Of a stretch of 28,887 nt of DNA, positions 490 through 28,887 are shown in pieces. Numbering within the stretch: position 1 is the first letter of the stretch; each line of letters begins with the position of its first letter. The notes beneath the pieces were generated by a model. It did not search any database. It was not told the origin of the DNA and was given only the letters and a program-made list of their open reading frames with translations. The stretch comes from Prasinococcaceae sp. CCMP 1430. Its lineage: Eukaryota > Plantae > Prasinodermophyta. The position numbers and the translations under genes were made by a program. The DNA is taken from positions 4,634-33,520 of the forward strand of contig RQSC01000013.1 in assembly GCA_013416795.1 (NCBI GenBank), written 5' to 3'.

Positions 490-1864
490 TCATCTCGGTG
501 GCGGCGGCATGTGCCCGGCAGCAGGCGGCATGCCGGGCGGAACACCCACGGGCGCAGCCCCCCACGGGCCGGCTGGCGGCGGCGGCATGCCCGGCGGCGG
601 CCCCTGCATTGGCGGCAGTTGTCCGCCAGGTGGTCGCATGCCCAAGGGCGGCGCGCCCCACGCACCAGGCGGCGGTGGCATACCGGGCGGCAGGCCTCGG
701 CCTGCAGACCCCGCTGCCATAGGCGGCGGAGGCATCCATCCTGGTGGCTGCTGCTGCGGTGGGGGCTGCATGGGCATGCCGGCAGGCGGCTGCATCTGTG
801 CGGGCATCTGCGGCGGAGGTGGCATGCCAGCCGGCGGCACCACCGCCGCCGGCGCAGATGGCGGCGGGAGTCCCAAACTCACCGGCTGCGCCGGACCTGC
901 CGCAAAGTGCATATTAGGCCGCGAGTCCCTCTTCCCCTGCTTGCGCGCGGCGGCAAGCATGCGTTCCGCAGGCGTGCCGTGGCGTTCGCCCCGCGAGTCC
1001 TTCTTGAACGCGTAGGTGACGTTGATTGCCCTCCCCGCCAGGAACTGGCCATCCATTGCCTCGATGGCCGCGTCACTGGCCTCAAAGCTGTCAAAAGAAA
1101 CGAAGCCGAAACCACGTGGGTTGCCCGTCTCCGCGTCGCGCGCCACCTTGGGCGCACCAACGACGACGCCGAACGCTCCGAACGTGTCATAGAGTAGCTT
1201 CTCGTCCACTTCGTCGCCAATGTTGCCCACGAAGATGTTCGCACCAACACCTAGCTCCTGGCCCCGATCCTGTGCCGAATGCGTCACGCGGATGGGCTTG
1301 TCGAATAGCTTGACCATGTTGAGAACCTTGGTCGCCTGCATGGCGCAGCGGCGGCGCGCAGGCGCGCAGAGCACGGCAACGCGTCCGACCAGCAACCGAG
1401 CGCCCAGCCGGCACCGGCCGGCGGTCACAGGGGCGCAGTGCGCACACACGCTGTCAGCACGCATCAAAGGGCGCGATGGACCCGCGAAGGGCGCACCACG
1501 TCGGGACTGCCCCGCGCTGCCAGGCGGGCAGCCGTACGGCCACATCTCGCGGACGCCTCACTGCTGGGTGGCAACCCTAAGGGTGTGAGCGCTGCGCGCC
1601 CGGCGGTGCGCGGCAACGCACGTAGTCAGCATCCTCCTCCGTGCGGAACTCGACGAACCCATAGCCCTGGTGAGTCCCCGTCACGCGGTCCTTCGGCAGG
1701 TACACGCTCGTGACTGGCCCGACCTGCAGGAAGAGCTCCCACAGCATCTCCTCGCTCACGCGCTCGTCGAGGTTGCCCGTCCAGCACGTCGCCTCCTGGT
1801 TGCGCGCGCCGTCCCCCAGCGAGACGCCGCTGGACGCCGTCACGCGCCCCCCAGCGGCCGACAT
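490..1864 (-). CDS. SF3B4: Splicing factor 3B subunit 4 (SAP49); exons 1864-1622 and 1335-490, intron 1336-1621
   Basis: RRM1 ([31 protein letters not shown]...HQGYGFVEF...DADY) splices across GTGCG...CAG to [17 protein letters not shown]. It continues through RRM2 (GANIFVGNI...[21 protein letters not shown]), the [10 protein letters not shown] motif and a Pro-rich tail. Confidence 0.96.
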
Positions 1865-4458: not shown

Positions 4459-6715
4459 ATGGCGGACGCAGCGATGGAGCAGGAGGCGCTGGAGGACCTC
4501 ATCGCGTCGCAGCAGGCCGCCGTCAACCAGAAGGGCGACGAAGTGCGCGCGCTCAAGGCCGCGGTGAAGACGGGCGACGCCGTCAAAGAGGATGTCGACG
4601 CCGCCATCCAGCAGCTCAAGGTGCGCGGCGCTGGCGCCAGCGCGGCTGCCCGCGAAGGGCGCGCGCGCCGGCGCGTGCGTGGCCCCACCGCAAGCCGCCG
4701 GCGGCGCTGCGCGCCCATGCCCTCTCATCTGACTCCGCCCGCGACCGCGTGACGGCCCGCACCCACCCGCCTGCCCTGCTCGCTTCGTGCTCGCCGCCGC
4801 GCAGGAGCTCAAGCTGGAGCTCGATGCGTCCATGTCGCAGTACACCTCCAAGAAGGGCGCCGGCGTGGACAAGGCGGCCTTCCGCGAGGCTTGCGCGAGC
4901 GCGCTCGAGCGTCGTCTGTTCTACGTGCCGTCGTACAAGATTTACGGCGGTGTGGCGGGCCTGTACGACTTTGGCCCGCCGGGCTGCGCGGTGAAGTCCA
5001 ACCTGCTGCAGCAGTGGCGCCAGCACTTCGTGCTTGAGGAGAACATGCTCGAGATCGAGTGCCCCGCGGTGACCCCCGAGTGCGTGCTGCGGGCGTCGGG
5101 TCACGTCGAGAAGTTCACAGACCTGATGGTGAGGGATGTCAAGACGCACCAGTGCTACCGCGCGGACCACCTGCTCGAGGGCCACCTGGAGCCGATGCTG
5201 GAGGATCCCACCGTGCCGCGCGACCAGCGCAAGGCCATGGAGCTCGACTTGAACCGCACGGACGAGATGTCGCCCGAGGAGCTCGGCGGCAAGCTCGAGT
5301 CGTACGGCGTCAAGGCGCCCGACACTGGCAACGACCTCACCGCCCCCTTCCCATTCAACCTCATGTTCGCGACGCAGATCGGTCCCATGGGGAACAACCA
5401 GGGCTTCTTCCGGCCCGAGACCGCGCAGGGCATCTTCGTCAACTTCCGCGACCTCCTCTACTACAACGGCGGCAGGCTGCCGTTCGCGGGCGCGCAGGTT
5501 GGCCGCGGCTACCGCAACGAGATCGCGCCGCGCCAGGGCCTGCTGCGCGTGCGCGAATTCGAGATGGCTGAGATTGAGCACTTCGTCAATCCGGACAAGA
5601 AAGACCATCCTCGCTTCTCCAGCGTGGCCGACCTGGAGCCGCTGCTCTTCGCGCGCGCGCAGCAGGCCGCCGTCGAGAAGCCTGTGGCTATGAAGCTTGG
5701 CGACGCCGTGCGCGATGGCATCATCGCCAACGAGACGCTTGGCTACTTCATCGGCCGCACGTACCTCTTCCTCAAGAAGGTGGGCATTGACCCGACGCGC
5801 CTGCGGTTCCGCCAGCACCTGCAGCACGAGATGGCGCACTACGCGTGCGACTGCTGGGACGCCGAGATCGAGTGCTCGTACGGCTGGGTGGAGTGTGTGG
5901 GGCTGGCGGACCGCTCTGCCTACGACCTTACGGCGCACTCCGCAGCCACCAAGGTGGACCTGAGCGCACACGAGACCTTCGCAGAGCCGGTCATGGAGGA
6001 GGTGCTCGAGATCAAGCCCAACAAGAAGGACGTTGCCAAGGCGTTCAAGCGCGACACCAAGCTGGTCACCGAGACGCTCGAGGCCATGGACGAGGCGGAG
6101 GCGATGGCAATGGCCGAGGCGCATGCTAGCGGCGCCGACGTGAGCATCAAGTCGGTCACCACCGGGCAGGAGTTCACCATCACCCCGGGCATGGTCGCCA
6201 TCGCCAAGAAGACGAAGAAGGTGACGGGCAGGTCGTTCGTGCCCAGCGTGATCGAGCCTTCCTTTGGCATCGGGCGCGTGCTGTACATGGTCTTCGAGCA
6301 CTCATTCTACGTGCGCGAGGACGACGACCAGAAGACCGTCTTCAAGTTCCCGGCGGTGATGGCGCCCACCAAGTGCGCGCTCTTCCCGCTGCAGGTCAAG
6401 AAGGACTTCGAGCCCATGCTCGAGCGCATCTCGCGCTCGCTGGTGAGCGCGGGCGTCTCCAACAAGATCGACGATTCGAGCGCCTCCATCGGCAAGCGCT
6501 ACGCGCGCTTCGACGAGCTGGGTGTTCCCTTTGCGGTCACCGTCGACTTCGACTCGCTCACGGACGACACCGTCACGTTGCGTGAGCGTGACTCGACGAC
6601 CCAGCTACGCCTGCCCGCGGACGACGTCGCCGACCTGCTCATGCGCCTCTCCAACGGCAGCGCCACGTGGGAGGAGGCTGCGGCCAAGTACCCCGCCGTC
6701 ACGGCCAAGGAATAA
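4459..6715 (+). CDS. GARS1: Glycyl-tRNA synthetase (homodimeric eukaryotic type, N-terminal WHEP domain); exons 4459-4620 and 4805-6715
   Basis: WHEP helix pair (KGDEVRALK...VDAAIQQLKELK), IYGGVAGLYDFGPPG, RPETAQGIFVNF, RNEIAPRQGLLRVREFEMAEIEHF, VIEPSFGIGR and the anticodon-binding domain. Intron 4621-4804 reads GTGCG...CTGAC...CAG, phase 0. Confidence 0.97.
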
Positions 6716-6892: not shown

Positions 6893-7955
6893 TCACTGCC
6901 AGATCCTCACGAGCCCGTCGGCGCCAGCCGTTACCATGCACGGCTGCGTCGGATGGTGTGCGACGCCCGTGACCGCCGCAGCATGCGCACGGTCAAAGCG
7001 CCTCACCGCCTCGCCCTCGACCTGGGTGTGCGCGGAGAGGGTAGTGATCGGCAGGGAGGGCGCGTCAGAGAGCCGCTGTGGCGCACGCGGCGCACGCGCG
7101 CAGGTGGTGAGGCCGCGCGCACCGCACTCAGCATGAGCGGGAACACGCACGCGCGGGGAGCGCGCGCGTGCGCACCAGGTCCCAGATGGTGACCCCGCCG
7201 CCTTCGTCGCCCGCCACGACGTGCGCGTCGTCGTGCGAGAAGCAGCAACCTACGCGCGCCGAGCGGTTGGCGTGACCGTGCCCGCGGTAGGTCTGCAGCT
7301 TGCCGCCGTCGGCGCGGTCGATCAGCGCGAGTGAGTCGTCGAGCGTGGCCGCGAGGAGGCAATTGCCATCACCGCTCACGGCGACATTGCCGACGGGCGA
7401 GCCGAGCGAGTCGCGGACGGCCTCGGCGTTGCGCAAGTCGAAGGTGCGCACAGACCCATCGACCGACGCAGCCACAAGCGCCTCCTTCTCGACGACGACC
7501 GCCATGACCGCGTCAGTGAAGTGCTTGAGCGTCTGGATGGGCTCGTGCGAGCCCGAGCGCGCATCCCACAGCCTCACGGTCGCGTCGTACGAGCCCGACG
7601 CGACGACGCTCGCCTGCGCATTCATCCCGATGGCGAAGACCTTGCCGGCATGTCCGCGCCAGCGCCGCACGACGGAGCCACTGGTGACATCCACGAGTGC
7701 AGCGGTGGCGTCGGCGCCGCCGCTCGCGAAGCGCGCATTGTCGGGCGACACCGCTAGGTCGTGCACCTCCTTGCCGTGCACCTCATACTCCTTCACCGCC
7801 GTGCCCGTTCGCGGATTCCATAGCCGCACCGTGCGATCCGCGCCCGCGCTCAGCGCGTAGTTGCCCTTGGCGGTGAAGACGCACTGCAGCACGGCGCCAC
7901 GGTGCCCACTGAGCTCGAAGGCCACGCCCGAGGGCAGGTCGCGGGGCACCTCCAT
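6893..7955 (-). CDS. WDR83: WD40-repeat protein WDR83/MORG1-like; exons 7955-7176 and 7021-6893
   Basis: WD repeats (GNYALSAGADRTVRLWNP, VVASGSYDATVRLWDARS..EPIQ, SVDGSVRTFDLR, LQTYRGH) typical of WDR83. Intron 7022-7175 reads GTGCG...CTGAC...CAG. Confidence 0.9.
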
Positions 7956-8382
7956 CGTTGCAGTCCACCCGCCCACCCGTCGGGCCGCGCGCGCGCGCCT
8001 GCGGCGGAGCTGGCCGGGCGCTCTACTGATTTAGCAGCCGGACGTCGCACGAATCGCACGAACTCTCAGCTGTCGGTGTTGAGCATGAGCTCCCCCCAGC
8101 GCTCGTGCTCGCCGCCCGCGTGCCTCGCCGAGCGCCCGCCCGCGCCGCTGGCGCCGCCCGCGCCTNNNNNNNNNNNNNNNNNNNNNNNNNCCGCTGCCCC
8201 GCCCCCCCTCGGCCCGCCCTCGCCCTCGCGCTCGCCACGGCTTTGAAACGAGTGCTCCCGTCACTACAGTACAATGTACTCATCATCAGTACAGTGTACT
8301 GCCCAAGTGGCAAGTGCCCTCCCTCGTCAATGTTTACAGTACTGTACTGTACAGTAGGTTCACATCATTTACGGTTTTACGG

Positions 8383-10242: not shown

Positions 10243-11946
10243 CTACCGCGTTGACGTGTCTGGGGCGTCCCCGCCTGGAGCGCTTGCGCCAGCAACCTTC
10301 TCTCTGCCTTGCCGAGCGGGGCCTGCGGGATCAATGTCGACGAACATGATGGTGATGTCGTCTCGCGGGTGGCCCGAATAGACGCGCTTCTCAACGGCGG
10401 TGCCAATGAGACTGGCCGACACGCGCTCAGGCTTTCCGTGGTTGATGCGCGCGCCGAGCTTGGCCGCCGGCGCCTTCGAGCCGTCGACGCCGCCCAGTGC
10501 TAGTCTAGAAGACACGCAGTCCCAGAGGCCGTCACTTGCAAGCACGATGCGCGCCATTTCTCCTACGTGCACTTTCGCTTGGGAGAACTCCGGGTCGGCG
10601 ATGACGCCGCAGCCCCACCCACGGTCACCGATAGTGCGGCTCACGCCCATTGACGCTCCGTCCGGACGAATGAAGCGCGGCGCCGATGTGTACCCGTTCT
10701 GAGTGGACATCTTGGCCACGAACGGCACCGCCGGCACCGATACGTCACTTGCGGACTCCTCTTCCAGCGAGTTGGCCGAGCTGCGCCGCGCGTGTAGCAG
10801 CGCCATAGCACCGGCCATACCACCTCGGATGGAACCCTCACTCGCCTGCATGCGCAGCGCGCGCGAGTAGGCGTCCGTGTCATTGATTTCGCCTCTGGAC
10901 TCAATCTCAGCCGCATCGCCACCTTGAAGCATTGTAGAGATCCGGCTGAGCTTGTCGACATCCTGGCGTGGCACCACAAGCACACCATCGTGGCCTGGCG
11001 AGGGACGGGGCAACGCACGATCGAAGGAGGACGAGATGCCATAGCGCTCCTTGACGCTGTCGCGCAGGCGCTTCTGCTCGGCAGGGGTGCCTGGTTTGTG
11101 GTCTGTTGTGAGGTCGCGGACTCGCGCAGCCTCGGTTGCGCCTCCCGTCTCTGGCCCACCCCAGGTGAGCATTGCCGCGCGAGAGTCGCCTACCCAGGCG
11201 CTCAGCACGTCAACAGTCTTGCCGGCAGGGCAGTACTTGAGAAAGATGAGCGTCGCCGTGGTTCCTCCATGCATTGTCGAACAGACGTGCTTGTCGAGCT
11301 CAACGAACGCCGTCGACACGCACTCGAGCAGCAGCGGGCTCCATGCTTCTTGCGTGTCCAGCGTCGTCTCGACTGCGTAGGTGTCTGATGTCTTGGACGC
11401 TCCGGGGGGAGGAGTCTGCAGCTCCGCCTCCTTGCGATCGATCGCGGCCGAGATGCGGTGCAGCAATTCTTTCGCGGCCAGTGTCGCAGCAGAGGATCCG
11501 TTGTGCCCGTCATACACAGCGTAGGCTGCATGGGCATGCCGCGCGAGGCCCTCCAAGCCCGGCACGCCCGCGAGGACCTCGGCAGCCGCCCATCGATCCT
11601 CGTCCTTGTGTGCAGGCTGCTGGGTGACGCCGAAACACCATGGCATACCTGCTGCTGCGCCCGGCGATGCTGGTCCCTGCCCCTCCGCGCAGGCTTGCGT
11701 CGAGCCGGCTGTGGTTCGCAGTGCCTTGTCGTACCCGTTGCCAGTTGTCTTCCCCATCCTGCGGCCGCCCTCGAGGGGGCCCATCATCACGCGCCCCGAT
11801 CCCGGCGCGGTCTGACGTCCGTTGGCATTCCCGCTCAGGACCGCGGCCGCTCCTGATTTGTTCGCGTGCCCACCGCCGTGGGGCGACAGGCCTTCGCCCA
11901 CGACGATCGCGGCCATCGAGAGGACGTTGTTGGCGCCCTTGCCCAT
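10243..11946 (-). CDS. Protein phosphatase 2C (PPM family) with a long internal insertion
   Basis: EDR, AVYDGHNG, GTTA, AWVGDSRA, LTTDHKP, SRTIGD, LASDGLWD and DDITI motifs occur in order. Likely start MGKGANN at 11946. Confidence 0.92.
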   Translation of the reverse strand: MGKGANNVLSMAAIVVGEGLSPHGGGHANKSGAAAVLSGNANGRQTAPGSGRVMMGPLEGGRRMGKTTGNGYDKALRTTAGSTQACAEGQGPASPGAAAGMPWCFGVTQQPAHKDEDRWAAAEVLAGVPGLEGLARHAHAAYAVYDGHNGSSAATLAAKELLHRISAAIDRKEAELQTPPPGASKTSDTYAVETTLDTQEAWSPLLLECVSTAFVELDKHVCSTMHGGTTATLIFLKYCPAGKTVDVLSAWVGDSRAAMLTWGGPETGGATEAARVRDLTTDHKPGTPAEQKRLRDSVKERYGISSSFDRALPRPSPGHDGVLVVPRQDVDKLSRISTMLQGGDAAEIESRGEINDTDAYSRALRMQASEGSIRGGMAGAMALLHARRSSANSLEEESASDVSVPAVPFVAKMSTQNGYTSAPRFIRPDGASMGVSRTIGDRGWGCGVIADPEFSQAKVHVGEMARIVLASDGLWDCVSSRLALGGVDGSKAPAAKLGARINHGKPERVSASLIGTAVEKRVYSGHPRDDITIMFVDIDPAGPARQGREKVAGASAPGGDAPDTSTR

Positions 11947-12528: not shown

Positions 12529-12658
12529 GCCGGCGCGCCGGTGCGTGCGGGTGAGGAGGACATGAGATCTTGTATATGGTCACGCGCGCCCACGGGAGGG
12601 CTGCTGCCCGGCCGCGGAGCGCCTGGCGCCGCGGGGCGGCCGCGGGAATTCTATGGCN

Positions 12659-13359
12659 ATGCGCGCGCCGAGCTTGGCCGCCGGCGCCTTCGAGCCGTCG
12701 ACGCCGCCCAGTGCTAGTCTAGAAGACACGCAGTCCCAGAGGCCGTCACTTGCAAGCACGATGCGCGCCATTTCTCCTACGTGCACTTTCGCTTGGGAGA
12801 ACTCCGGGTCGGCGATGACGCCGCAGGCCCATCCACGGTCACCGATAGTGCGGCTCACGCCCATGGACGCTCCGTCCGGACGAATGAAGCGCGGCGCCGA
12901 CGTGTACCCGCAATGAGTGGACATCTTGGCCACGAACGGCACCGCCGGCAGTTCCGATACGTCACTTGCGGACTCCTCTTCCAGCGAGTTGGCCGAGCTG
13001 CGCCGCGCGTGTAGCAGCGCCATAGCACCGGCCATACCACCTCGGATGGAACCCTCACTCGCCTGCATGCGCAGCGCGCGCGAGTAGGCGTCCGTGTCAT
13101 TGATTCCACCTCTGGACTCAATCTCAGCCGCATCGCCACCTTGGAGCGTTGAAGAGATCTGGCTGAGCTTGTCGACATCCTGGCGTGGCACCACAAGCAC
13201 GCCATCGTGGCCTGGCGAGCGACGGGGCGACGCACGATCGAAGGAGGGCGTGATGCCATAGCGCTCCTTGACGCTGTTCCGCAGGCGCGTCTGCTCGGCG
13301 GGGGTGCCTGGTTTGTGGTCTGTTGTGAGGTCGCGGACTCGCGCAGCCTCGGTTGCGCC
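12659..13359 (-). CDS. Partial second copy of the PP2C (corresponds to 10445-11142), bounded by N at both ends
   Basis: Manual alignment gives about 22 substitutions plus one 3-bp insertion over ~700 bp, with the frame intact. Confidence 0.85.
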
Positions 13360-13459
13360 NNNNNNNNNNNNNNNNNNNNNNNNNNNNNNNNNNNNNNNNN
13401 NNNNNNNNNNNNNNNNNNNNNNNNNNNNNNNNNNNNNNNNNNNNNNNNNNNNNNNNNNN

Positions 13460-14763
13460 CCGAGGACGGCGCCGAGGGGCCCCACGGCGGCGTCCGCGCC
13501 GAGGTCCATGCCCGCGCCGTCGGCGCCCGCGCCGTGCTCGCCCGGCAGCGCGCGCACGTTGAGCGACCTGAGCACCTTGCGGTGGTACTCGGCCGCCTCG
13601 CCTTCGTCGCCCATCGCCTGGTGCAGCTTGGCCAGCTTGGCCAGCGCGATCCCCTCGCCCTCGTTGTTGTCCAGCGCGCGGCGGTAGCAGCGCACCGCGT
13701 GCTCGCGCAGCCCCAGCTGCTCGCTCTCGTAGCACTGCCCCATCGCGCACCACATGCGCGCGTCCTGCGGGCGCAGCTGCGTGGCGCGCCGGTAGTAGTA
13801 CAGCGAGTAGTACGGCATGTGCAGGATCTCGTACGTCTGGCCCAGGCCGTACCACGCGCGGTAGTCGCGCGGGTTGATGTCCACCGCGCGCCGGTACGCG
13901 TCGATGGCCGCCGGGGTGTTCTTCATCTCCACGTACTCGTGCCCCATGAGCGTCCACGCGCTGAGGTACTTGCGGTCGAGCTTGAGCGCGCGCCGGAAGT
14001 ACACCACCGCCTTCTCGTGCTCCGCGCGCAGCGAGTAGTAGTTGCCCACCACGCAGCACGTCTCGGGGCGGTACTTGTCGGTGCGCACCGCGCGGTGCGC
14101 GAGGTGCGAGAGCGTCGCCCACTGCTCGGTGACGTACAGGATGTTGGAGTAGGTGTCCGTGCCCTCCACCATGTGCGGGTCCTTGGCCTGCAGGTCGGCG
14201 AAGCGCACCTGCGCCTCGTCGAACGCGCGCAGGTTGTAGTAGGCGGTGGCCACCGCGCACGCGACGGTCGACGAGCGCGGGAAGAGCGCGCCCAGCGACT
14301 CGTACAGCGCGAGGCCGCGCTCGTTGCGCTGGCCCTCGAGGCACGCGGCGGCCTCGAACGCCTGCCGCGCGAAGTGCGGCGGCAGCGCGAGCGCCTCGAT
14401 CTGCTCGGCCTCCCCCGCCAGCGGCACGAGCTCGCGCCACGCGAGCCAGTTGCACGGAAAGGCGCGCACGCTGTCGGCGAGCGCGCGCGCGGCCTCGTCG
14501 GCGCGCTCGAGCGCGCGCAGCACCACGCCGTGCAGGTACGCGAGGAAGGGGTCCGCCCCGTTCTCGCCGCCGCCCGCGCGCAGCCGCGCGAGCTCGGCGT
14601 CGAGCGCGGGCAGCTCCTCGTTGGCAACCTCGGCCTTGCCCAGCGGCCCGGCGAGCTCGACGAGCTCCTCCTCGGCGCGCCGCTCGCCCGCCAGGTAGCG
14701 CGCGCGCAGCCCCACGAAGAGCGGCGCGCCCGACGCCGCGCCGCGCAGCGCGTGCGCCGCGCG
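13460..14763 (-). CDS. CDC23: Anaphase-promoting complex subunit 8 (CDC23), internal part between gaps
   Basis: DTYSNILYV, DKYRPETCCVVGNYYSLRAEHEKAVVYFRRALKL and AWTLMGHEYVEMKNTPAAIDAYRRAVDINPRDYRAWYGLGQTYE TPR block. Confidence 0.96.
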
Positions 14764-15691
14764 NNNNNNNNNNNNNNNNNNNNNNNNNNNNNNNNNNNNN
14801 NNNNNNNNNNNNNNNNNNNNNNNNNNNNNNNNNNNNNNNNNNNNNNNNNNNNNNNNNNNNNNNNNNNNNNNNNNNNNNNNNNNNNNNNNNNNNNNNNNNN
14901 NNNNNNNNNNNNNNNNNNNNNNNNNNNNNNNNNNNNNNNNNNNNNNNNNNNNNNNNNNNNNNNNNNNNNNNNNNNNNNNNNNNNNNNNNNNNNNNNNNNN
15001 NNNNNNNNNNNNNNNNNNNNNNNNNNNNNNNNNNNNNNNNNNNNNNNNNNNNNNNNNNNNNNNNNNNNNNNNNNNNNNNNNNNNNNNNNNNNNNNNNNNN
15101 NNNNNNNNNNNNNNNNNNNNNNNNNNNNNNNNNNNNNNNNNNNNNNNNNNNNNNNNNNNNNNNNNNNNNNNNNNNNNNNNCCGCCGTGGCGCCGCCGCAG
15201 GCGCGCGCGCCGGCGCCGCCGGCGCAAATCCCGCCCCAAATGTACTCCCGTCGTTTAAAATAATGTAGATAAACATACACACGCGGAATAAGCACCTTTC
15301 AAATTGTCGGTCTTCCGCGATTCGCAGCGCCGGCGCGCGCGCGCGCGCGCGCGCGGGCTGCCCCCTTTTTGCGCGTGCGGCCTCGCCGCCTCCCCGCCGC
15401 GAAACGCCCCCGAAATTCTCTCCGCGACGCCCCGCGGCGCGGCCGCGACCGCGCGCCCGCGCGCGTCGAAATAGATCCCGCGTTTTTCGTTTCAAAAGCG
15501 CGTTGGAATGACGCCCTGCGGCTTCCCGGTTCTGCCCCGCGCGGAGGACCGCGCGGGACCCCGCGGACCGCGCTCGCGCGAAATGGCCGCACCGCCGCGA
15601 AATCCCCTTTCAGGGGCGAAGGCGACGCGTCGGAGTGTGCCCCCACGTGCGATCGAAGGGAAGGCCATTGCGAGCCTCAAACGCGGCGTAA

Positions 15692-15719: not shown

Positions 15720-17423
15720 TACGGCGACGGCCGCACTGCCGCGACCGGCGCTCGGCAGAGGGGGCACTGCGCGCGGACCTTGAGCCACTCGTCCATGCAG
15801 CGGAGGTGGCACGCGTGTCCGCACGCGGGCAGCCTGCGCAGCTGCTGGCGGGGCTCGAGCTCCGCCAAACAGATGGCGCAGGCGTCCGCCTGCGCGCCGG
15901 ACGTGGCGAAGCCATCGTCCGCCCCGGCCGATGATGCTCCGGTCGTGGTGGGAGCGCGGGCCGACACCAGCTCCAGGGGAAGTGTTGCGATGGCCTCTTC
16001 GGAGAGGCCAGCTGGGGCCGCATCCTTCGCGGCCTCCGCAGTGCCAGCCTCGTCGACTGGTCGGAGAGTGGAGAGGAGTGAGCGCGCGAGCGCCGCCACG
16101 TCGCTGGCGTTGCTCTCGAGCGTCGCGGCACCCGCAGACGTTGCTGCGGGTTGAGGCATTGCTCCAGAGCGTCCTCAAGCAATGTGACCACGCTTTGGGG
16201 GCCACGGGGGAGCGGCAGGGCGGCGCGTCAGCGTCCATGATCATGTCCTCGCTCCCGGAAAGACGTAAGCGCACGCGCGCACGCGCACACCCGAGCGTAC
16301 GAGACCAGCCCGCGGCGCACCTGTCGATGAGCGCGAGCTGCCGTGATCGCTGGTGCTGAACCTGCGGGTCCACGCCAGTGTCTCCGGTGACCGTGGCAGC
16401 AGAAGTGATGGCGGCGCGATGCTCAGCGCGCTCCGCGTTGAGCAGCACTGCAAGGGCCGAGAGCTGCCGTCGGCGCAGGCCGAGCTGCTCTGCGCGCAGC
16501 GCGCGCAATTCGTGCATCGACGACTCCTGCGCGGCGCGCAGCCGGCGCAGGCGAGTCTGCAGCGCGGCGCTTCCTTCGACGCTCGCAGCGGACTCGCCTC
16601 GAGGCGCGTGGTGCTGCGGCTGCCGCACCCCAGGCGGGCGCATCACGCGCAAGTTTGAGCGCTCGTCCTCATCCACCGAGGTGGCCCAGAAGAGCGATCG
16701 CCGCGCACCCCGCGGGTTGCTGCGCTCCATGTTTTGCGGTGGGGCCGGTCGCAGACGCAGACGCTGTTCGGCAGTCTGCTCCCGCTGGCGCTGCGATGTG
16801 CGCACGAGCTCTCTCAGGACTGACGTGGCGTCGTCCGTCGGAGACCTCGACAGGAGCGCGTGCACGTGCGAGCCCGAGCGCGGCGGCTGCGTTGGATGGC
16901 GCTGCAACGCGGCGACCGCCAGCCCCGGCGGGGACTGGTGCAGGGGTGCCGGCCTCGCTCGCCGCAGCACCCCCCCTCGCGCGCGCCCCTCGCTCGAGAG
17001 CGCGGGCCATCTCCGCGCCGCCGTTCCCGAAGGACTCCCGCTGCTTGGCGAGCCGCGCTGTGGGGAGATGCGGGGCACGGCGCCAGCTGCGTCATCTGTC
17101 CCGGCGGAGAAGAGTCCCCGAGGCTGCACCCGCGCGCGCGAATGAGACTGCGGCGGTGGCTGAGTATGATTCTCCGCGCGCGCGCCCTGCCATCTCGGGC
17201 GTAGCTCCCTGGCTGACAGGGCATACGGCGGCGACGGGGGCAGCCTCACGCTAACGGGGGCGCCCTCAGACGCCACGGCGCTGCGCATCGTCGCGGAGGG
17301 CGCCCTGGCGCCCTCAATCTCGCGCCCGCCCACTGCGGTGCCCGGCAGACTGAGCAGCGAAGCGACCGTTCCTTGCCTTGCGCGCTCGAGAGCTCGCTCG
17401 GCGCGCTGCTGCGTGGAGTCCAT
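15692..17423 (-). CDS. RING-H2 E3 ligase-like protein with long low-complexity N-terminus; intron donor at 16320, acceptor uncertain
   Basis: C-terminal CAICLAEL...LRRLPACGHACHLRCMDEWL...CPLCR (C3H2C3). Upstream ORF starts MDSTQQRAER at 17423. GTGCG donor at 16320 and GCTGAC at 16227-16232. Confidence 0.72.
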
Positions 17424-22228: not shown

Positions 22229-22395
22229 CGAGCGCGGCGGCTGCGTTGCATGGCGCTGCAACGCGGCGACCGCCAGCCCCGGCGGGGACTGGTGCAGGGG
22301 TGCCGGCCTCGCTCGCCGCAGCACCCCCCCTCGCGCGCGCCCCTCGCTCGAGAGCGCGGGCCATCTCCGCGCCGCCGTTCCCGAAGGACTCCCGC
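22229..22395. repeat. 167-bp near-identical copy of 16875-17041 (inside the RING gene), ending at a single N
   Basis: One mismatch by eye (ttgGat vs ttgCat); terminates at N22396. Confidence 0.9.
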
Positions 22396-22541
22396 NGCGG
22401 GCGCGCGCGCCTGCGCGCGCACCGCGCGGCCGTTGAAGCTGCTGGCCGCGGCGCCGGCCTGTGCAAGCGCAGGGGAAGCAACATCGCGGGGGCGGCGTGG
22501 GGATCATGCGGGAGATTGGCATGGAAGCGATCGGCTGGGTG

Positions 22542-23793
22542 TCAGCGGGGCGGACGGGGGCCGTCGCGCGCGCGCAGCCTCCATAGCGCGCGCGCGGCGG
22601 CCAGCGAGGGCGCCTCGCCCGTGCCGGCGTTGCCCAGGTAGCGCTCGCTGTACGCCATCGCCGCGGGCATGACGCCGAACAGCGTGAGCACACCGAAGGT
22701 GCCCGCCACGTCGAGGGCGTCCAGGAAGACGTCCGGCTGCAGCGCGGCGAAGACCACCGGCGGGACCAGCGTCAGCGCGTACGGCAGCGGCTGCCGCCCA
22801 GTGGGGAGGCCCAGGCCGTCCGCGAGGAAGTCGCTCAGCCCCAGGACGAAGCCGACGAAGGAGGTGGTCACGGCCAGCAGCGAGAAGGTCTCGACGAAGC
22901 CGCCGAGGCCCGCCTCCGACAGCGAGCGCAGCGGGTCCACGGCGGACCCCGGCGGCGCGGCGCCCAGCGCGGCCGCCTCCCACAGGAGGAACATCACGAG
23001 CGGGACGGCCGTGCCGCCCAGGAGCGCCGTGCGAATCTTGGCGACGTCGCCCTCGAGGCTGGTGACCACCGTCGGCACGATGTTCTGGTACACGAAGGAG
23101 AGCGCGATGACGGGCAGCGCGCCGGTGACGGCCCCCCAGTCGGCGTGCGCCAGGTTCTCCGCGCTGGCCTGGCCGCCGGCGGCCACCAGGCACACGCCGA
23201 AGGAGCCCACGACGCCCGCGAAGAGCGCGCCGTTGAGGCCGTCCAGCACCTTGGGCTGGAGGAAGTAGCACGCGCCGCCGACCGCCGCGGCGAACGCCGC
23301 GCCGCCCACGGCCGGGCTGAGGCCCGTGGCGACCTCGATGGCCTGGCCGCCCCTGGAGATGTACGCCACGAGCAGGCAGTAGTGCAGGAAGACGTACGCG
23401 CCCCACGCGAACCGCGTGCCCGGCGCGCCCAGCGTGCGCCGCGCCATCGACACGATGCCCGTGCCGCCGCCCTCGCTCACCGAGCACAGCGTCGCGATGT
23501 TCACCTCGACGATGAGCAGGCCCGTGGCCGCCATGTACGCCCAGCAGCCGACGAGCGCGGCGGTGCTCGGCACGAAGCCCGCGGGCGCCGTCACCGCCGG
23601 CAGCGCCAGCACGCCCGCGCCCACCGCCGTGCCGGAGACGAGCACCGTCGCGCCCCACACGCTGCCCGGCTCGTGCCGCAGCGCCCCGCCGCCGCCCGCG
23701 CCGCTCAGGTTGCTCCACAGCCGCGTGGGCGCCGGCGCCGCGCTCGCCAGGAAGACCTTGCCCGCCTGCCGCGCCCCGCCCGCCGCCCTCCCC
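22542..23793 (-). CDS. Tryptophan/tyrosine permease (TyrP/HAAAP family); 5' end lost at N23794, extreme C-terminus doubtful
   Basis: PGSVWGATVLVSGTAVGAGVLALP...PAGFVPS, YVFLHYCLLVAY, LPVIALSFVYQNIVP, TSFVGFVLGLSDFLAD and ALDVAGTFGVLTLFG. Confidence 0.9.
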
Positions 23794-23794
23794 N

Positions 23795-24474
23795 CGTCAT
23801 CCGACCCAGCCCATCCGATCCACGCCCGCCGCACCCCGCCGCAGATGGGAGGAGGGGGAGGACGCAAACACAAACGCCCCACCCCGCGCCACGCGCGCGC
23901 GGGGAAGCAAGCGCGAGACCAACCAACCAACCAAGCAACCACCCAAGACTTGCAAAAGAGCCTGTTAGTGAGGCAGGACGCCGCCGAGCGCGCGCGCGTT
24001 CGCGAGGGAAGAACCCCGGAACGGATGGGCGAATCCGAACGAACCGACGCAAACTGACTGACTCACTGAGCTTTGCTGTTGACCGAAAGAAAGATCTACC
24101 AACCAATCCGAGACCGTATTAGGGTTACGTATTACGGTTTTTAAACTTGAGGGTTTGGGTTTGTTTGTTTGTGGCGTTCGCCGCGTGGCGGCCGAAACGG
24201 CATCGGTCGGCCCGGGCGAGGCGTCACACGGGCGAGGGGGCGCGGGCGGGGGCGGGGGGGCGGCGGCGCCGCTCCTCCTCAGCCTCGCTCCCTACACACG
24301 CACGCACCGCCAACACCAGCAGCAGCCCCGCGACCTCGTCCGTCTCCTTTCCTCGCGACTGACCGCCGCGCGACCCGCCGGAAGGACGGGCGGACCGCGC
24401 GGCATGCAGAAGGTCTTCGGGTGGGGCGGCGGCGCAGATGGCGGCGGCGCCGATGGCGGCGGCGGGGGCGCGCC
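23795..24474. repeat. Copy 1 of an apparently identical block of at least 680 bp (divergent promoter plus CHORD gene start); copy 2 at 28208-28887
   Basis: Constant offset of 4413 bp with no differences seen. Contains (CCAA)n, (ACTG)n and (GTTT)n mini-repeats. Confidence 0.92.
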
Positions 24475-25684
24475 CGCCGCGCCGGCGCCCGCGCCCGTCG
24501 TGACGGTGCCGGCGAACGGCTACCGCGGCAAGCACGACGCCGTGCTGGGTCACATGCTCGAGAAGGTGGAAGGCAAGCCCGAGCTGATGATCGACACTGT
24601 GCTCGACTTCGTCAGGCGCTCCACGGACTTCTTCGCAGACGGCCGACGAGCCGCGCTCGCGCTCGCGGCGGTGTGCAATCGCTTCGCAGACGTCAGCAGG
24701 ACGGCCGCCGCCGACATGGGAGCGGGCGGAGGTGCGGGCGCGGGTGCACGCATGGGGGTGGGCGGGGGAGCGGCGGCGGTGGCTGACATCGACGACGACG
24801 ACGACGACGACGACGAGAAGGTCTCGCCGGCCGCCCGTGCGTCCGCCGCCGCCGCACCGGCCTCCGCCCCCGCTGCGGAGGCCGGGGTGGACGTCCCCAT
24901 CACGCTCAAGAAGGCGCCCGCTGTGGCGCTGCCCGTGAGCGTCTCCAAGTCCGCGCGGGCGGCGCTCGAGAGGTTCAGGGCGGCGGGCGGGGGAAAGGGC
25001 GCGGGCGGCGGCGGCGCGGGAGGAGCCGCCTCCGGGGGCTCGGACGAGATCGCGCCGGGCACCAAGTGCCTGCACCGAGGCTGCGACGCGGCCTACCGCT
25101 CCGAGGCGACGCTGCGCGAGGTCTGCGTGTACCACCCCGGCAACCCGGTCTTCCACGAGGGCTTCAAGTTCTGGAGCTGCTGCGAGCGCACCAAGGTGAC
25201 GGACTTCTCCGAGTTCCTGTCCATCCGCGGCTGCACCGAGGGCAGGCACTGCTTCCGCGACGAGGCCGCCGAGGCCAAGGCGCTCGAGTGCCGCACGGAC
25301 TTCTTCCAGGTGGGCTCCGGCGTGATGTACAACATCTACGCCAAGAAGGTCGACCCCGAGCAGTGCACGTTCGAGGCCACGCGCGGCAGGCTGAGGTTCA
25401 AGGTGAGCTTCGACGGCGGCAGCGTCTTCGAGAGGACCATCCGCCTCGCGGGCGCAGTCGACCCCAGCAGGTCAAAGGTGAGGCGCGAGGCGCGGGGCGC
25501 GGGGCGCGAGGCGCGAGGCGCGAGGCGCGCGGAGCCTGACCATCCGACCCTCCTTCGCTCCCACCCTTCCCCTCGCCGTGCGCGCGCCGCGCCCTCTCAG
25601 GTGGAGATCCTCGAGCCGAAGATCGAGATCTCGCTCCACAAGGCGGACGGCTCTTCTTGGAAGAGCATCGGCACAGCCGTGTGA
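24404..25684 (+). CDS. CHORD- and CS-domain protein (putative Hsp90 co-chaperone) with NudC-like N-terminal domain; intron 25478-25600
   Basis: Complete CHORD (CLHRGC...CVYHPGNPVFHEGFKFWSCC...FLSIRGCTEGRH) and CS domain (CRTDFFQ...IYAKK...LAGAVDPSRSK/VEILEPKIEISLHKADGSSW). The N-terminus carries DAVLGHM...IDTVLDFVRRSTDFF. Confidence 0.92.
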   Translation: MQKVFGWGGGADGGGADGGGGGAPAAPAPAPVVTVPANGYRGKHDAVLGHMLEKVEGKPELMIDTVLDFVRRSTDFFADGRRAALALAAVCNRFADVSRTAAADMGAGGGAGAGARMGVGGGAAAVADIDDDDDDDDEKVSPAARASAAAAPASAPAAEAGVDVPITLKKAPAVALPVSVSKSARAALERFRAAGGGKGAGGGGAGGAASGGSDEIAPGTKCLHRGCDAAYRSEATLREVCVYHPGNPVFHEGFKFWSCCERTKVTDFSEFLSIRGCTEGRHCFRDEAAEAKALECRTDFFQVGSGVMYNIYAKKVDPEQCTFEATRGRLRFKVSFDGGSVFERTIRLAGAVDPSRSKVRREARGAGREARGARRAEPDHPTLLRSHPSPRRARAAPSQVEILEPKIEISLHKADGSSWKSIGTAV

Positions 25685-26061: not shown

Positions 26062-26790
26062 TTTCACGCGATGTGCGTGGATCTCCAGGAGCTGAGTGGC
26101 CGTGACAGCCACCACGTCGTCGGCGCTGCTCTTGTGCTCAGCAGTCACAGCATTGTCCGCATCGCCGTCGCTGCCACCATGGGTCGCAGCAGTGCCAGAG
26201 CCTTCGGCGGCATCAGTGTTTGCACCTTGCATCTCGTTGTCCATGCCGTCGTCTTGGCCGCCTAAGGCGCTTCCTTCGGCGGCTGCTGCCCCCGGTATCG
26301 TTTCTGACTGCACGGAGCGCGCGTCAAACGTCCAATACGGCGTCGACAGCTCGACCTTTGGCACAAATTGTCCCCCATTCGGTGGATCGACATCCCAGTC
26401 GTCTGTGACAGTCCTAGTTGAGAGCGCGGCAGCCAGAGCGGCGCCAGAGAAGCCACCCGAGAAGTCGGCGTTGGCGAACTGGTGCGACCCAGTATGGGGC
26501 GAGCCAGATGGCGACTGCACGTCACCGGCAGCACCACCGGCGCCGCTCAGGCGTGTGTCCTCCAGAAGCGCAAACCGCAAGCTGAACGCCTCGATTGGCA
26601 CACTGAGCGACAGGCTGATGGCCCAGACGACGTTTTGGTCGTCGGTTGGAGCGGTCAAGTTGGCCTCTCCATTCGCACCCTCCACACCGATTTCCTCTAG
26701 CAACGGCGGCGCATCGTCGGCGCTGTCGTTTGTGCCCTGCCGAGGCGGAATCTGGTGCACTGAAATGCACACCGGCAGCACGGGGCCTTC
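26062..26790 (-). CDS. Fragment of an unknown acidic low-complexity protein
   Basis: Open for ~240 codons with lower GC3 than its neighbours and no start or stop of its own. It begins inside the CPO terminal intron and ends at N. Confidence 0.45.
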
Positions 26791-26818
26791 CCGGCGCGCA
26801 GCGCGCGGCTCGGCTCAC

Positions 26819-27860
26819 CTCGCGCGGGTTCCTGAAGGCGTCCATGATGTCGGCCTCGCGGCTGCCCTCCTCGGGCTCGTGGCAGTACTCGAAGCGGCAG
26901 GTGAGCGGCAGCGACATGAGCACGCTCTCGATCCTGCCGCCGGTCTTGAGGCCGAAGGTGGTGCCGCGGTCGTACACGAGGTTGAACTCCACGTAGCGGC
27001 CGCGGCGCAGCTGCTGCCACTCCTTCTCGGCGGCGGTGTAGGGGTCGTCCTTGTGCTTGGCCACCAGCGGCACGTACGACTCCACGACGGCGTTGGCGCA
27101 GTCGGTGGAGAAGGCGAAGTGCTCGTCCTTGCTCTTGTTGTTCTGGTCGTCGAAGAAGATGCCGCCCAGGCCGCGCGTCTCGCCGCGGTGCTTGATCTGG
27201 AAGTACTCGTCGCACCACTTCTTGAACTCGGGGTAGTACTCGGGGTCGTGCTTGTCGCACACCGCCTTGTACGTGCCGTGGAAGTGCTTCATGTCCTCCT
27301 CGAAGAGGTACGAGGGCGTGATGTCCGTGCCGCCGCCGAACCACCAGGCGCGCGGCGCGTCGCGCTCGTCCATGCCGGCGGGCGGCTGCGTCTCGAAGTA
27401 GCGGTAGTTGAAGTGCATGGTGGGCGCCATGGGGTTCCACGGGTGCATCACCGAGCTGATGCCCGCCGCGAAGAAGGGCACGGCCTCGGTGACCTTGTTC
27501 CCCGAGCCGCCGGTGGCCGCACGGTAGGCGTCGGGCGGCATGGAGCCGTAGACGACGCTGACGTTGACCCCCGCCTTCTCCCACACGTTGCCGCCCTGCA
27601 GCACGCGGCTGATGCCGCCGCCGCCGCCGGGGCGCGTCCAGCTGTCCTCGTGGAACTTGCCGCCGTCGACCTCCTCGACGGCCGCGCAGATGTCGTTCTG
27701 CGCCTTGCGGATCATCTCCTCGAAGCGCTCGCGCATGCCGTCGCCCGTGCCGATCTCCTCCTCGCGCACGAGCGTCTCCGGCGCCTGGTCGACGGCCGTC
27801 TCCTTCTCGATGGCCGTGCGCGCCGCCGCGGGGGCGCGACGGGGCGCCGCCGCGCGCCGC
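26819..27860 (-). CDS. hemF: Oxygen-dependent coproporphyrinogen III oxidase (plastid type); start and last micro-exon missing
   Basis: [79 protein letters not shown] and [20 protein letters not shown]. Ends NPRE followed by a GTGAG donor at 26818. Confidence 0.95.
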
Positions 27861-28207: not shown

Positions 28208-28887
28208 CGTCATCCGACCCAGCCCATCCGATCCACGCCCGCCGCACCCCGCCGCAGATGGGAGGAGGGGGAGGACGCAAACACAAACGCCCCACCCCGC
28301 GCCACGCGCGCGCGGGGAAGCAAGCGCGAGACCAACCAACCAACCAAGCAACCACCCAAGACTTGCAAAAGAGCCTGTTAGTGAGGCAGGACGCCGCCGA
28401 GCGCGCGCGCGTTCGCGAGGGAAGAACCCCGGAACGGATGGGCGAATCCGAACGAACCGACGCAAACTGACTGACTCACTGAGCTTTGCTGTTGACCGAA
28501 AGAAAGATCTACCAACCAATCCGAGACCGTATTAGGGTTACGTATTACGGTTTTTAAACTTGAGGGTTTGGGTTTGTTTGTTTGTGGCGTTCGCCGCGTG
28601 GCGGCCGAAACGGCATCGGTCGGCCCGGGCGAGGCGTCACACGGGCGAGGGGGCGCGGGCGGGGGCGGGGGGGCGGCGGCGCCGCTCCTCCTCAGCCTCG
28701 CTCCCTACACACGCACGCACCGCCAACACCAGCAGCAGCCCCGCGACCTCGTCCGTCTCCTTTCCTCGCGACTGACCGCCGCGCGACCCGCCGGAAGGAC
28801 GGGCGGACCGCGCGGCATGCAGAAGGTCTTCGGGTGGGGCGGCGGCGCAGATGGCGGCGGCGCCGATGGCGGCGGCGGGGGCGCGCC
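28208..28887. repeat. Copy 2 of the duplicated block, including the start of a second CHORD gene copy (ATG 28817) running off the window
   Basis: Identical to 23795-24474. Confidence 0.9.

What the first reader, a model, noticed from the sequence alone, without database searches (positions are those of the whole stretch)
24404..25684. Putative new Hsp90 co-chaperone architecture: NudC-N domain + single CHORD + CS
Seen: after a Gly/Pro leader the protein has KHDAVLGHMLEKVEGKPELMIDTVLDFVRRSTDFF plus a following helix (~24530-24690). An acidic/Ala-rich linker follows, then exactly one CHORD zinc domain (~25067-25249) and a CS domain. Established: NudC-family N-termini carry D-x-x-L...F-L-R-R-K-T-D-F-F and mediate dimerisation. 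Animal CHP-1/melusin are CHORD-I + CHORD-II + CS, and land-plant RAR1 has two CHORDs with no CS. Here the CHORD (EVCVYH.G.P.FHEG.K.WSCC) and the CS resemble the CHP-1 CHORD-II-CS module. Inference: CHORD-I has been replaced by a NudC-type N-domain, so dimerisation could restore a two-CHORD unit or link the NudC and CHORD/Sgt1 arms of the Hsp90 system. The domains lie in one N-free ORF, so a scaffold join does not explain it. I know of no description of this architecture but cannot search.
Basis: partly seen in the sequence, partly recalled or inferred. Interest (0 to 1): 0.8.

Follow-up and report, generated by a model that had tools for sequence, protein, structure and literature searches.

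The report
NudC-capped single-CHORD Hsp90 helper protein
A marine green alga, Picozoa and cryptophytes share a chaperone-helper gene in which one of the usual two Hsp90-binding zinc (CHORD) domains is replaced by the N-terminal module of another helper, NudC, probably so that two copies pair up and act as the normal two-domain protein; I found no description of it.

Summary
The window is Prasinoderma coloniale. The CHORD is certain (Pfam 2e-23) and of CHORD-II type. The CS domain is confirmed through orthologues. The N-domain is a real NudC-N homologue: alone it is below Pfam's cut-off (21.7 against 31 bits), but a family profile retrieves plant, algal and animal NudC proteins, and the ESM Atlas's top three clusters are Nudc_N. 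The architecture is a family, not a quirk. It recurs in a second Prasinoderma-like species, in Picozoa, and in cryptophytes (Guillardia, Rhodomonas), which add an N-terminal TPR. Trees built without the N-domain join these lineages (98/98 and 95/96), so one ancient replacement of CHORD-I in a CHP-1 gene is likely. Hsp90/ADP-contact residues are kept; plant-type Sgt1-contact residues are not. Best model: a homodimer through NudC-N presents two CHORDs to the Hsp90 dimer (about 55%, untested).

The parts
24404..25477 (+). Exon 1 (358 codons): leader, NudC-N-like domain, linker, CHORD, first two thirds of CS
   Evidence: the start MQK.FG recurs in the second species, locus L008
24404..24526 (+). 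Gly/Ala/Pro-rich leader (aa 1-41); no TPR here or upstream
24527..24712 (+). NudC-N-like three-helix domain (aa 42-103; helices about 45-54, 59-73, 80-103)
   Evidence: Pfam Nudc_N E=2e-4; reciprocal profile search; hhalign 99.3%; Atlas; AlphaFold pLDDT 90
24713..24928 (+). Disordered Gly/Ala/acidic linker; the short motif before the Asp run is shared with the second species, so it is probably coding
   Evidence: pLDDT under 50
24929..24982 (+). Conserved linker helix, homologous to the helix between CHORD-I and CHORD-II of CHP-1 proteins
   Evidence: alignment A5; HMM match extends over it in CHP-1 proteins; helix in the model
25061..25249 (+). Single CHORD zinc domain, CHORD-II type; ligands C222, C227, C241, H244, C259, C260, C277, H282; ADP-contact pair H251-E252
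   Evidence: PMC2935968
25289..25477 (+). CS (p23-like) domain, part in exon 1; F301 and Y312 match Sgt1 Y157 and F168
   Evidence: PMC2935968 section 7
25478..25600 (+). In-frame 123-nt GT-AG intron (inferred; not shown by reads)
25601..25684 (+). Exon 2: last strands of CS with the Lys and Glu matching Sgt1 K221 and E223; stop codon

Best explanation
This is a cytosolic Hsp90 co-chaperone of CHP-1/Morgana descent in which CHORD-I was replaced, once and long ago, by the N-terminal three-helix module of a NudC protein. Shown here: the domain homologies, the single origin of the CHORD-CS part, and retention of the Hsp90- and ADP-contact residues. Inferred: the CHORD binds the ADP-loaded N-domain of open Hsp90 through F250, H251, E252, W257, F268 and F271, and the CS domain binds a second site on Hsp90-N. 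Inferred and least certain: the NudC-N module homodimerises, so two chains on flexible linkers of about 115 residues put one CHORD-CS arm on each N-domain of the Hsp90 dimer. That would be a symmetric, two-chain version of what one two-CHORD RAR1 molecule does. In cryptophytes an extra TPR would add a client or partner site.
For: CHORD and its interface residues: with PMC2935968 sections 9 and 10 (one Rar1 bridges both Hsp90 N-domains; isolated CHORD-II binds more weakly than CHORD-I, so avidity matters) and PMC5776081 (Sgt1(2)-Hsp90(2)-Rar1(1)). CS Hsp90-face residues compatible. NudC-N homology: 6 of 7 members hit Nudc_N. The family profile against 1.84 billion proteins returns the family first, then NudC proteins, some above the Nudc_N and NuDC cut-offs. 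A NudC-only HMM scores the window domain 53 bits against at most 7 for reversed controls. D, L, T and R positions are invariant or nearly so across 29 rows. A review states that NudC dimerises through its N-terminal region (PMC10780334). The modelled domain's weak fold neighbours include several homodimer modules (PKA D/D, 2jr2; Z 4.0, not significant). Single origin.
Against: No dimer was modelled or measured. No structure of any NudC N-domain is in the PDB. [quoted passage not shown] Fold matches at Z 4 mean little for helices. Human CHORD-I is reported to be dispensable for Hsp90 binding (Wu 2005 as cited in PMC9538636), so one CHORD may be enough. The NudC rows used for the NudC-only HMM were found with the family profile, which is partly circular; the Pfam and Atlas results are independent of that.
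Confidence: 0.55

Rival explanations
1. Adaptor model: the NudC-N module heterodimerises with the cell's own NudC/BOBBER protein and tethers a CHORD-CS arm to the NudC route that hands Hsp40-bound clients to Hsp90.
For: The dimer-type surface residues look like those of plant and algal NudC (47-54 bits on a NudC-only HMM for the Prasinoderma and cryptophyte rows). NudC recruits Hsp40-bound clients to Hsp90 (PMC10780334, PMC11687934). The protein has no match to the NudC segment PF16273, so it would need NudC in trans for that job.
Against: A NudC gene in Prasinoderma was not located with these tools. The picozoan copies have drifted far from NudC (24-29 bits), which fits self-pairing better than pairing with a conserved partner. 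Not exclusive with the homodimer model.
Confidence: 0.18
2. Monomer model: one CHORD plus CS suffices for Hsp90 binding, and the N-domain is a monomeric client- or partner-binding module.
For: CHORD-I is dispensable in human CHP-1 (cited in PMC9538636). A separate clade of marine single-CHORD+CS proteins with an unrelated short N-terminal region exists (L018, L019, L024, L027, L029). The isolated domain models confidently as a single chain (pLDDT 90).
Against: The NudC N-terminal region is described as a dimerisation module. The unrelated N-terminal region of that other clade could itself be an oligomerisation module.
Confidence: 0.2
3. RAR1-like link to Sgt1: the CHORD recruits Sgt1 as plant CHORD-II does, and the cryptophyte TPR form is in effect a CHORD-Sgt1 hybrid.
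For: Cryptophyte orthologues carry three TPRs that align end to end with human Sgt1 TPR (9uib_A, residues 8-114 to 8-114, E=7e-11). I216 matches Rar1 I153.
Against: Rar1 E170 and W217 are S233 and R281 here, and Sgt1-CS G182 and I185 are Thr and Arg. Many other TPRs score higher than Sgt1, and the capping region alone did not pick out Sgt1. No SGS domain. The CS groups with CHP-1-type sequences.
Confidence: 0.05
4. Artefact or one-off: an assembly chimaera, a pseudogene, or a chance helical resemblance.
For: The scaffold has many N joins, and 23795-24474 is duplicated exactly at 28208-28887. The Nudc_N score is below cut-off.
Against: The same domain order occurs in independent assemblies of this species, in a second species, in Picozoa and in cryptophytes, including a complete MMETSP transcript. 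Synonymous changes are in excess.
Confidence: 0.02

Closest known systems
CHP-1 / CHORDC1 / Morgana and melusin (animals, fungi, ichthyosporeans)
   Same: Linker helix + CHORD-II + C-terminal CS, 31-40% identical over that part; Hsp90-contact residues kept.
   Different: CHORD-I is absent and replaced by a NudC-N-like domain. The family forms its own supported clade.
Plant RAR1
   Same: CHORD fold (2xcm, Z 8.6, rmsd 3.2 over 73 residues); His-acidic ADP-contact pair.
   Different: RAR1 has two CHORDs and no CS, and binds Sgt1 through residues not kept here.
NudC / NudCL / plant BOBBER1
   Same: N-terminal three-helix domain followed, after a linker, by a CS domain: the same outer frame.
   Different: A CHORD lies between them. 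The CS is CHP-1-type. There is no PF16273 segment and no C-terminal NudC helices.
SGT1
   Same: CS domain; the cryptophyte form has an N-terminal three-TPR unit.
   Different: No SGS domain; Prasinoderma and Picozoa lack the TPR; Sgt1 origin of the TPR not shown.
Rex3/REXO1 exonucleases (PMC12129344)
   Same: Known proteins with a three-helix domain plus a single CHORD.
   Different: Their helical domain is KIX and the C-terminal domain is a DEDDh nuclease; unrelated function.

Membership tests
CHP-1/Morgana (CHORD-I + CHORD-II + CS) | Two tandem CHORD domains | tested here: not met
   One CHORD only, in the window and in all orthologues
CHP-1/Morgana (CHORD-I + CHORD-II + CS) | CHORD with six Cys, two zinc His and the invariant loop His | tested here: met
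   C222, C227, C241, H244, H251, C259, C260, C277, H282
CHP-1/Morgana (CHORD-I + CHORD-II + CS) | C-terminal CS domain directly after CHORD-II | tested here: met
   Orthologues above Pfam cut-off; Sgt1-CS match for P0012; beta-sandwich in the model. The window's two exons were not joined for a search.
CHP-1/Morgana (CHORD-I + CHORD-II + CS) | ADP-dependent Hsp90 binding | not testable with these tools
   Contact residues are kept
RAR1 | Two CHORDs and no CS | tested here: not met
RAR1 | Sgt1-binding residues I153, E170, W217 on CHORD-II | tested here: not met
   I216 kept; S233 and R281 replace E170 and W217
NudC family | N-terminal Nudc_N domain (homology) | tested here: met
   Below Pfam cut-off alone, but reciprocal profile, hhalign 99.3% and Atlas agree
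NudC family | PF16273 segment, NudC-type CS and C-terminal helices | tested here: not met
   No PF16273 hit; the CS aligns with CHP-1 and the protein ends with the CS
NudC family | Dimerisation through the N-terminal region | not testable with these tools
   Only single chains can be folded here; no NudC-N structure in the PDB
SGT1 | TPR + CS + SGS | tested here: not met
   No TPR in the window or upstream; no SGS hit in any orthologue scanned
SGT1 | Cryptophyte TPR is of Sgt1 type | tested here: inconclusive
   End-to-end match to 9uib_A, but other TPRs score higher

The most novel reading that the evidence does not exclude
An undescribed branch of Hsp90 co-chaperones arose once in the common ancestor of Archaeplastida and Cryptista, when a NudC dimerisation module replaced CHORD-I. 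It rebuilds the two-CHORD clamp as a symmetric dimer or couples directly to NudC, and the fusion is a rare genomic change supporting the debated CAM clade.
Probability: 0.3. Interest if true: 0.75.

Novelty: new variant of a known kind. Interest (0 to 1): 0.58.

Why it matters
[quoted passage not shown] A natural single-CHORD protein with a borrowed N-terminal module is a ready test of whether two CHORDs are needed and whether they can be supplied in trans. It is also a handle on the NudC N-domain, which has no solved structure. Its spread over the earliest-branching green algae, Picozoa (relatives of red algae, PMC8599508) and cryptophytes matches the proposed Archaeplastida + Pancryptista clade (PMC9006020). 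A proper genome survey could turn it into a rare-genomic-change marker, or into a case of gene transfer from the red endosymbiont. The parts themselves are all known, and no function is shown.

Tried and rejected
The spliced model was searched exon by exon; the joined step was left out, so Pfam CS was never scored on the joined window protein, and picozoan exons were kept in separate trees. An upstream TPR exon in Prasinoderma or Picozoa: not found. Loci first taken for Mamiellophyceae (labelled 'Mam') are Malassezia-type fungal genes; that reading was dropped, so no named green-algal two-CHORD protein was sampled. [quoted passage not shown] The N-domain tree does not resolve the NudC donor; one origin is not rejected (p-AU 0.20). 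The order among Prasinoderma, Picozoa and cryptophytes is unresolved (all p-AU above 0.05). The CHORD-only tree is too short to group Prasinoderma with the others. Fold searches on the N-domain gave nothing above Z 4.4. The EukProt model's two extra in-frame introns (24758-24880, and from 25403) were rejected: the second removes CS strands and the first removes a motif that the sister species keeps. Zheng 2011 and Biebl 2022 were not held. Earlier scan notes had nothing on CHORD.

Full report
Observation. The + strand ORF 24404-25684 is open and has no N. Pfam finds one CHORD at aa 220-282 (E=2e-23) and Nudc_N at aa 43-78 (E=2e-4, 21.7 bits, cut-off 31). The genome is Prasinoderma coloniale: EukProt PRCOL_00002330 is a model of this gene. 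Every orthologue lacks those 41 codons, EukProt resumes at the same acceptor, and some independent assemblies shift frame inside it. The product is about 385 aa, with the CS domain split over two exons. CS is shown by orthologues and by the AlphaFold model of exon 1.

Is the N-domain NudC-N? Four lines of evidence say yes. (i) Six of seven family members hit Nudc_N, best E=6e-6, all below cut-off. (ii) A 59-position family profile searched against 1.84 billion proteins gave 53 hits. Family members come first, then plant BOBBER-type proteins (one with CS and the NudC C-terminal motif), algal NudC-like fragments, and animal NudC proteins that pass both Nudc_N and NuDC cut-offs; four hits are unrelated repeats or long proteins. 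(iii) An HMM built only from those NudC rows scores the window domain 53 bits, against at most 7 for reversed sequences, and hhalign gives 99.3% over 60 columns (partly circular). (iv) The ESM Atlas's three best clusters for the isolated domain are Nudc_N (0.90-0.91, 189-198 shared features; recognition 2142 is below the tool's threshold, so this is supporting only). The domain models as three helices at pLDDT 90. No NudC N-domain is in the PDB, and fold neighbours reach only Z 4.4.

What replaced what? After the disordered linker comes a short conserved helix that aligns with the helix between CHORD-I and CHORD-II of CHP-1 proteins. The CHORD falls on the CHORD-II side of a domain tree (96/87). 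So everything from that helix onward is CHP-1, and the NudC-N module sits where CHORD-I was.

It is a family. A second Prasinoderma-like species from ocean metagenomes has the same start and order, without TPR (L006-L011). Cryptophytes have TPR + N-domain + CHORD + CS: Guillardia theta GUITHDRAFT_165757, a Rhodomonas salina cluster that includes a complete MMETSP transcript, and at least four environmental relatives placed there by the tree. A third lineage has N-domain + CHORD + CS with no TPR seen upstream (L012-L015, L025, L033, L034, L057-L060). One of its ORFs clusters at 90% with EukProt Picozoa sp. COSAG04; the others join it at 99/99 or better. Trees that leave the N-domain out unite the lineages: helix+CHORD+CS gives Prasinoderma + cryptophytes 98/98 (Picozoa left out because of introns), and CS alone gives all three 95/96. 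The outgroup is mostly animal, fungal and ichthyosporean CHP-1 plus unnamed marine sequences, so the limits of the family are not established. The three named lineages all fall in the proposed Archaeplastida + Pancryptista clade (PMC9006020; Picozoa placement PMC8599508). Vertical inheritance with wide loss is the simplest reading (about 55%, inference). Transfer to cryptophytes from their red endosymbiont is the main rival (about 25%): Picozoa nest with cryptophytes in the CHORD tree and share a His-to-Cys change at the last zinc ligand, but AU tests reject no order. Lateral transfer or a wider, unsampled range takes the rest.

How it probably works. Reading the alignment to Rar1 CHORD-II against PMC2935968: the Hsp90 contacts F187, H188, D189, W194, F204 and F207 are F250, H251, E252, W257, F268 and F271 here, so ADP-dependent binding to Hsp90-N is expected (inference from conserved residues). 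On the CS domain the Hsp90-face residues Y157, F168, K221 and E223 of Sgt1 are F301, Y312 and a Lys and Glu in exon 2, compatible as in Chp-1. The Sgt1-binding residues E170 and W217 are lost, and the CS residues that bind Rar1 (G182, I185) are Thr and Arg, so the plant RAR1-SGT1 interface is unlikely. That paper reports that CHORD-II alone binds Hsp90 more weakly than CHORD-I and that one Rar1 occupies both N-domains of the dimer. A protein left with CHORD-II only would gain most from dimerising, and the module it acquired comes from the region said to dimerise NudC (PMC10780334). I put the homodimer model at 0.55, a monomeric partner-binding role at 0.2, a heterodimer with NudC at 0.18, an Sgt1 link at 0.05 and artefact at 0.02. 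From memory, not checked here: NudC's Hsp40-binding helix is residues 100-141 (the 42-residue chain 7ndx_B matches the PF16273 region). The algal protein has no PF16273 match, so it should not relay Hsp40 clients by itself.

Membership. It is not a CHP-1 (one CHORD), a RAR1, a NudC or an SGT1 by their defining architectures. It works most like CHP-1/RAR1.

Novelty. Nine literature searches on these proteins returned no description of NudC-N + CHORD + CS or of the TPR form. A 2026 survey of RAR1/SGT1 covers only streptophytes. The library lacks most subscription papers. Automatic annotation hides the architecture because the N-domain is below the Pfam cut-off: the Guillardia protein is listed as hypothetical or 'CS domain-containing'. 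The scan's earlier notes hold nothing on CHORD. Verdict: real, a new variant of a known kind, interest 0.58.

Noticed in passing
window 23795-24474 and 28208-28887: Exact 680-nt duplicate (100%) holding the promoter and the first 71 nt of this gene; the second copy runs to the window's end. Single Ns at 23794 and 26061 flank the gene-bearing segment. Probably an assembly overlap, but a second gene copy beyond the window is possible.
   Followed up: partly
window 10445-11142 / 12659-13359 and 16875-17058 / 22229-22410: Near-identical repeats (96-97%) next to N joins. The first fuses part of a PP2C-like gene to the end of an APC8/CDC23-like TPR ORF (12580-15495), probably a gap-filling artefact.
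   Followed up: no
L018, L019, L024, L027, L029: A separate clade (100/100) of marine proteins with one CHORD-II + CS and a different short N-terminal region that is not NudC-N; organisms unidentified. An apparent independent loss of CHORD-I.
   Followed up: partly
P0023, P0017, P0021, P0022; L015, L025, L034: In cryptophyte and picozoan members the last zinc ligand of the CHORD is Cys instead of His; Prasinoderma keeps His.
   Followed up: partly
window 24758-24880 and 25403-25600: The EukProt model PRCOL_00002330 starts at Met51 and calls in-frame introns that delete conserved coding sequence, including CS strands; it looks mis-modelled.
   Followed up: yes
L014:416-610: Short metagenome contig with an N-domain like this family's (33 bits on the NudC HMM), cut off before any CHORD; possibly a fourth lineage.
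   Followed up: partly
window 24404-24427 and L008:1761-1787: The first residues (MQK.FG..G) are conserved between the two Prasinoderma-like species although the rest of the leader is not; role unknown.
   Followed up: no
window 490-1545 (-), 4787-6715 (+), 7128-7976 (-), 22542-23942 (-), 26522-27769 (-): Neighbours, recognised by eye from the ORF list only: SF3B4-like RRM protein, glycyl-tRNA synthetase, WD40 protein, aromatic amino-acid transporter, coproporphyrinogen oxidase. No chaperone cluster; synteny with the second species is not kept.
   Followed up: no
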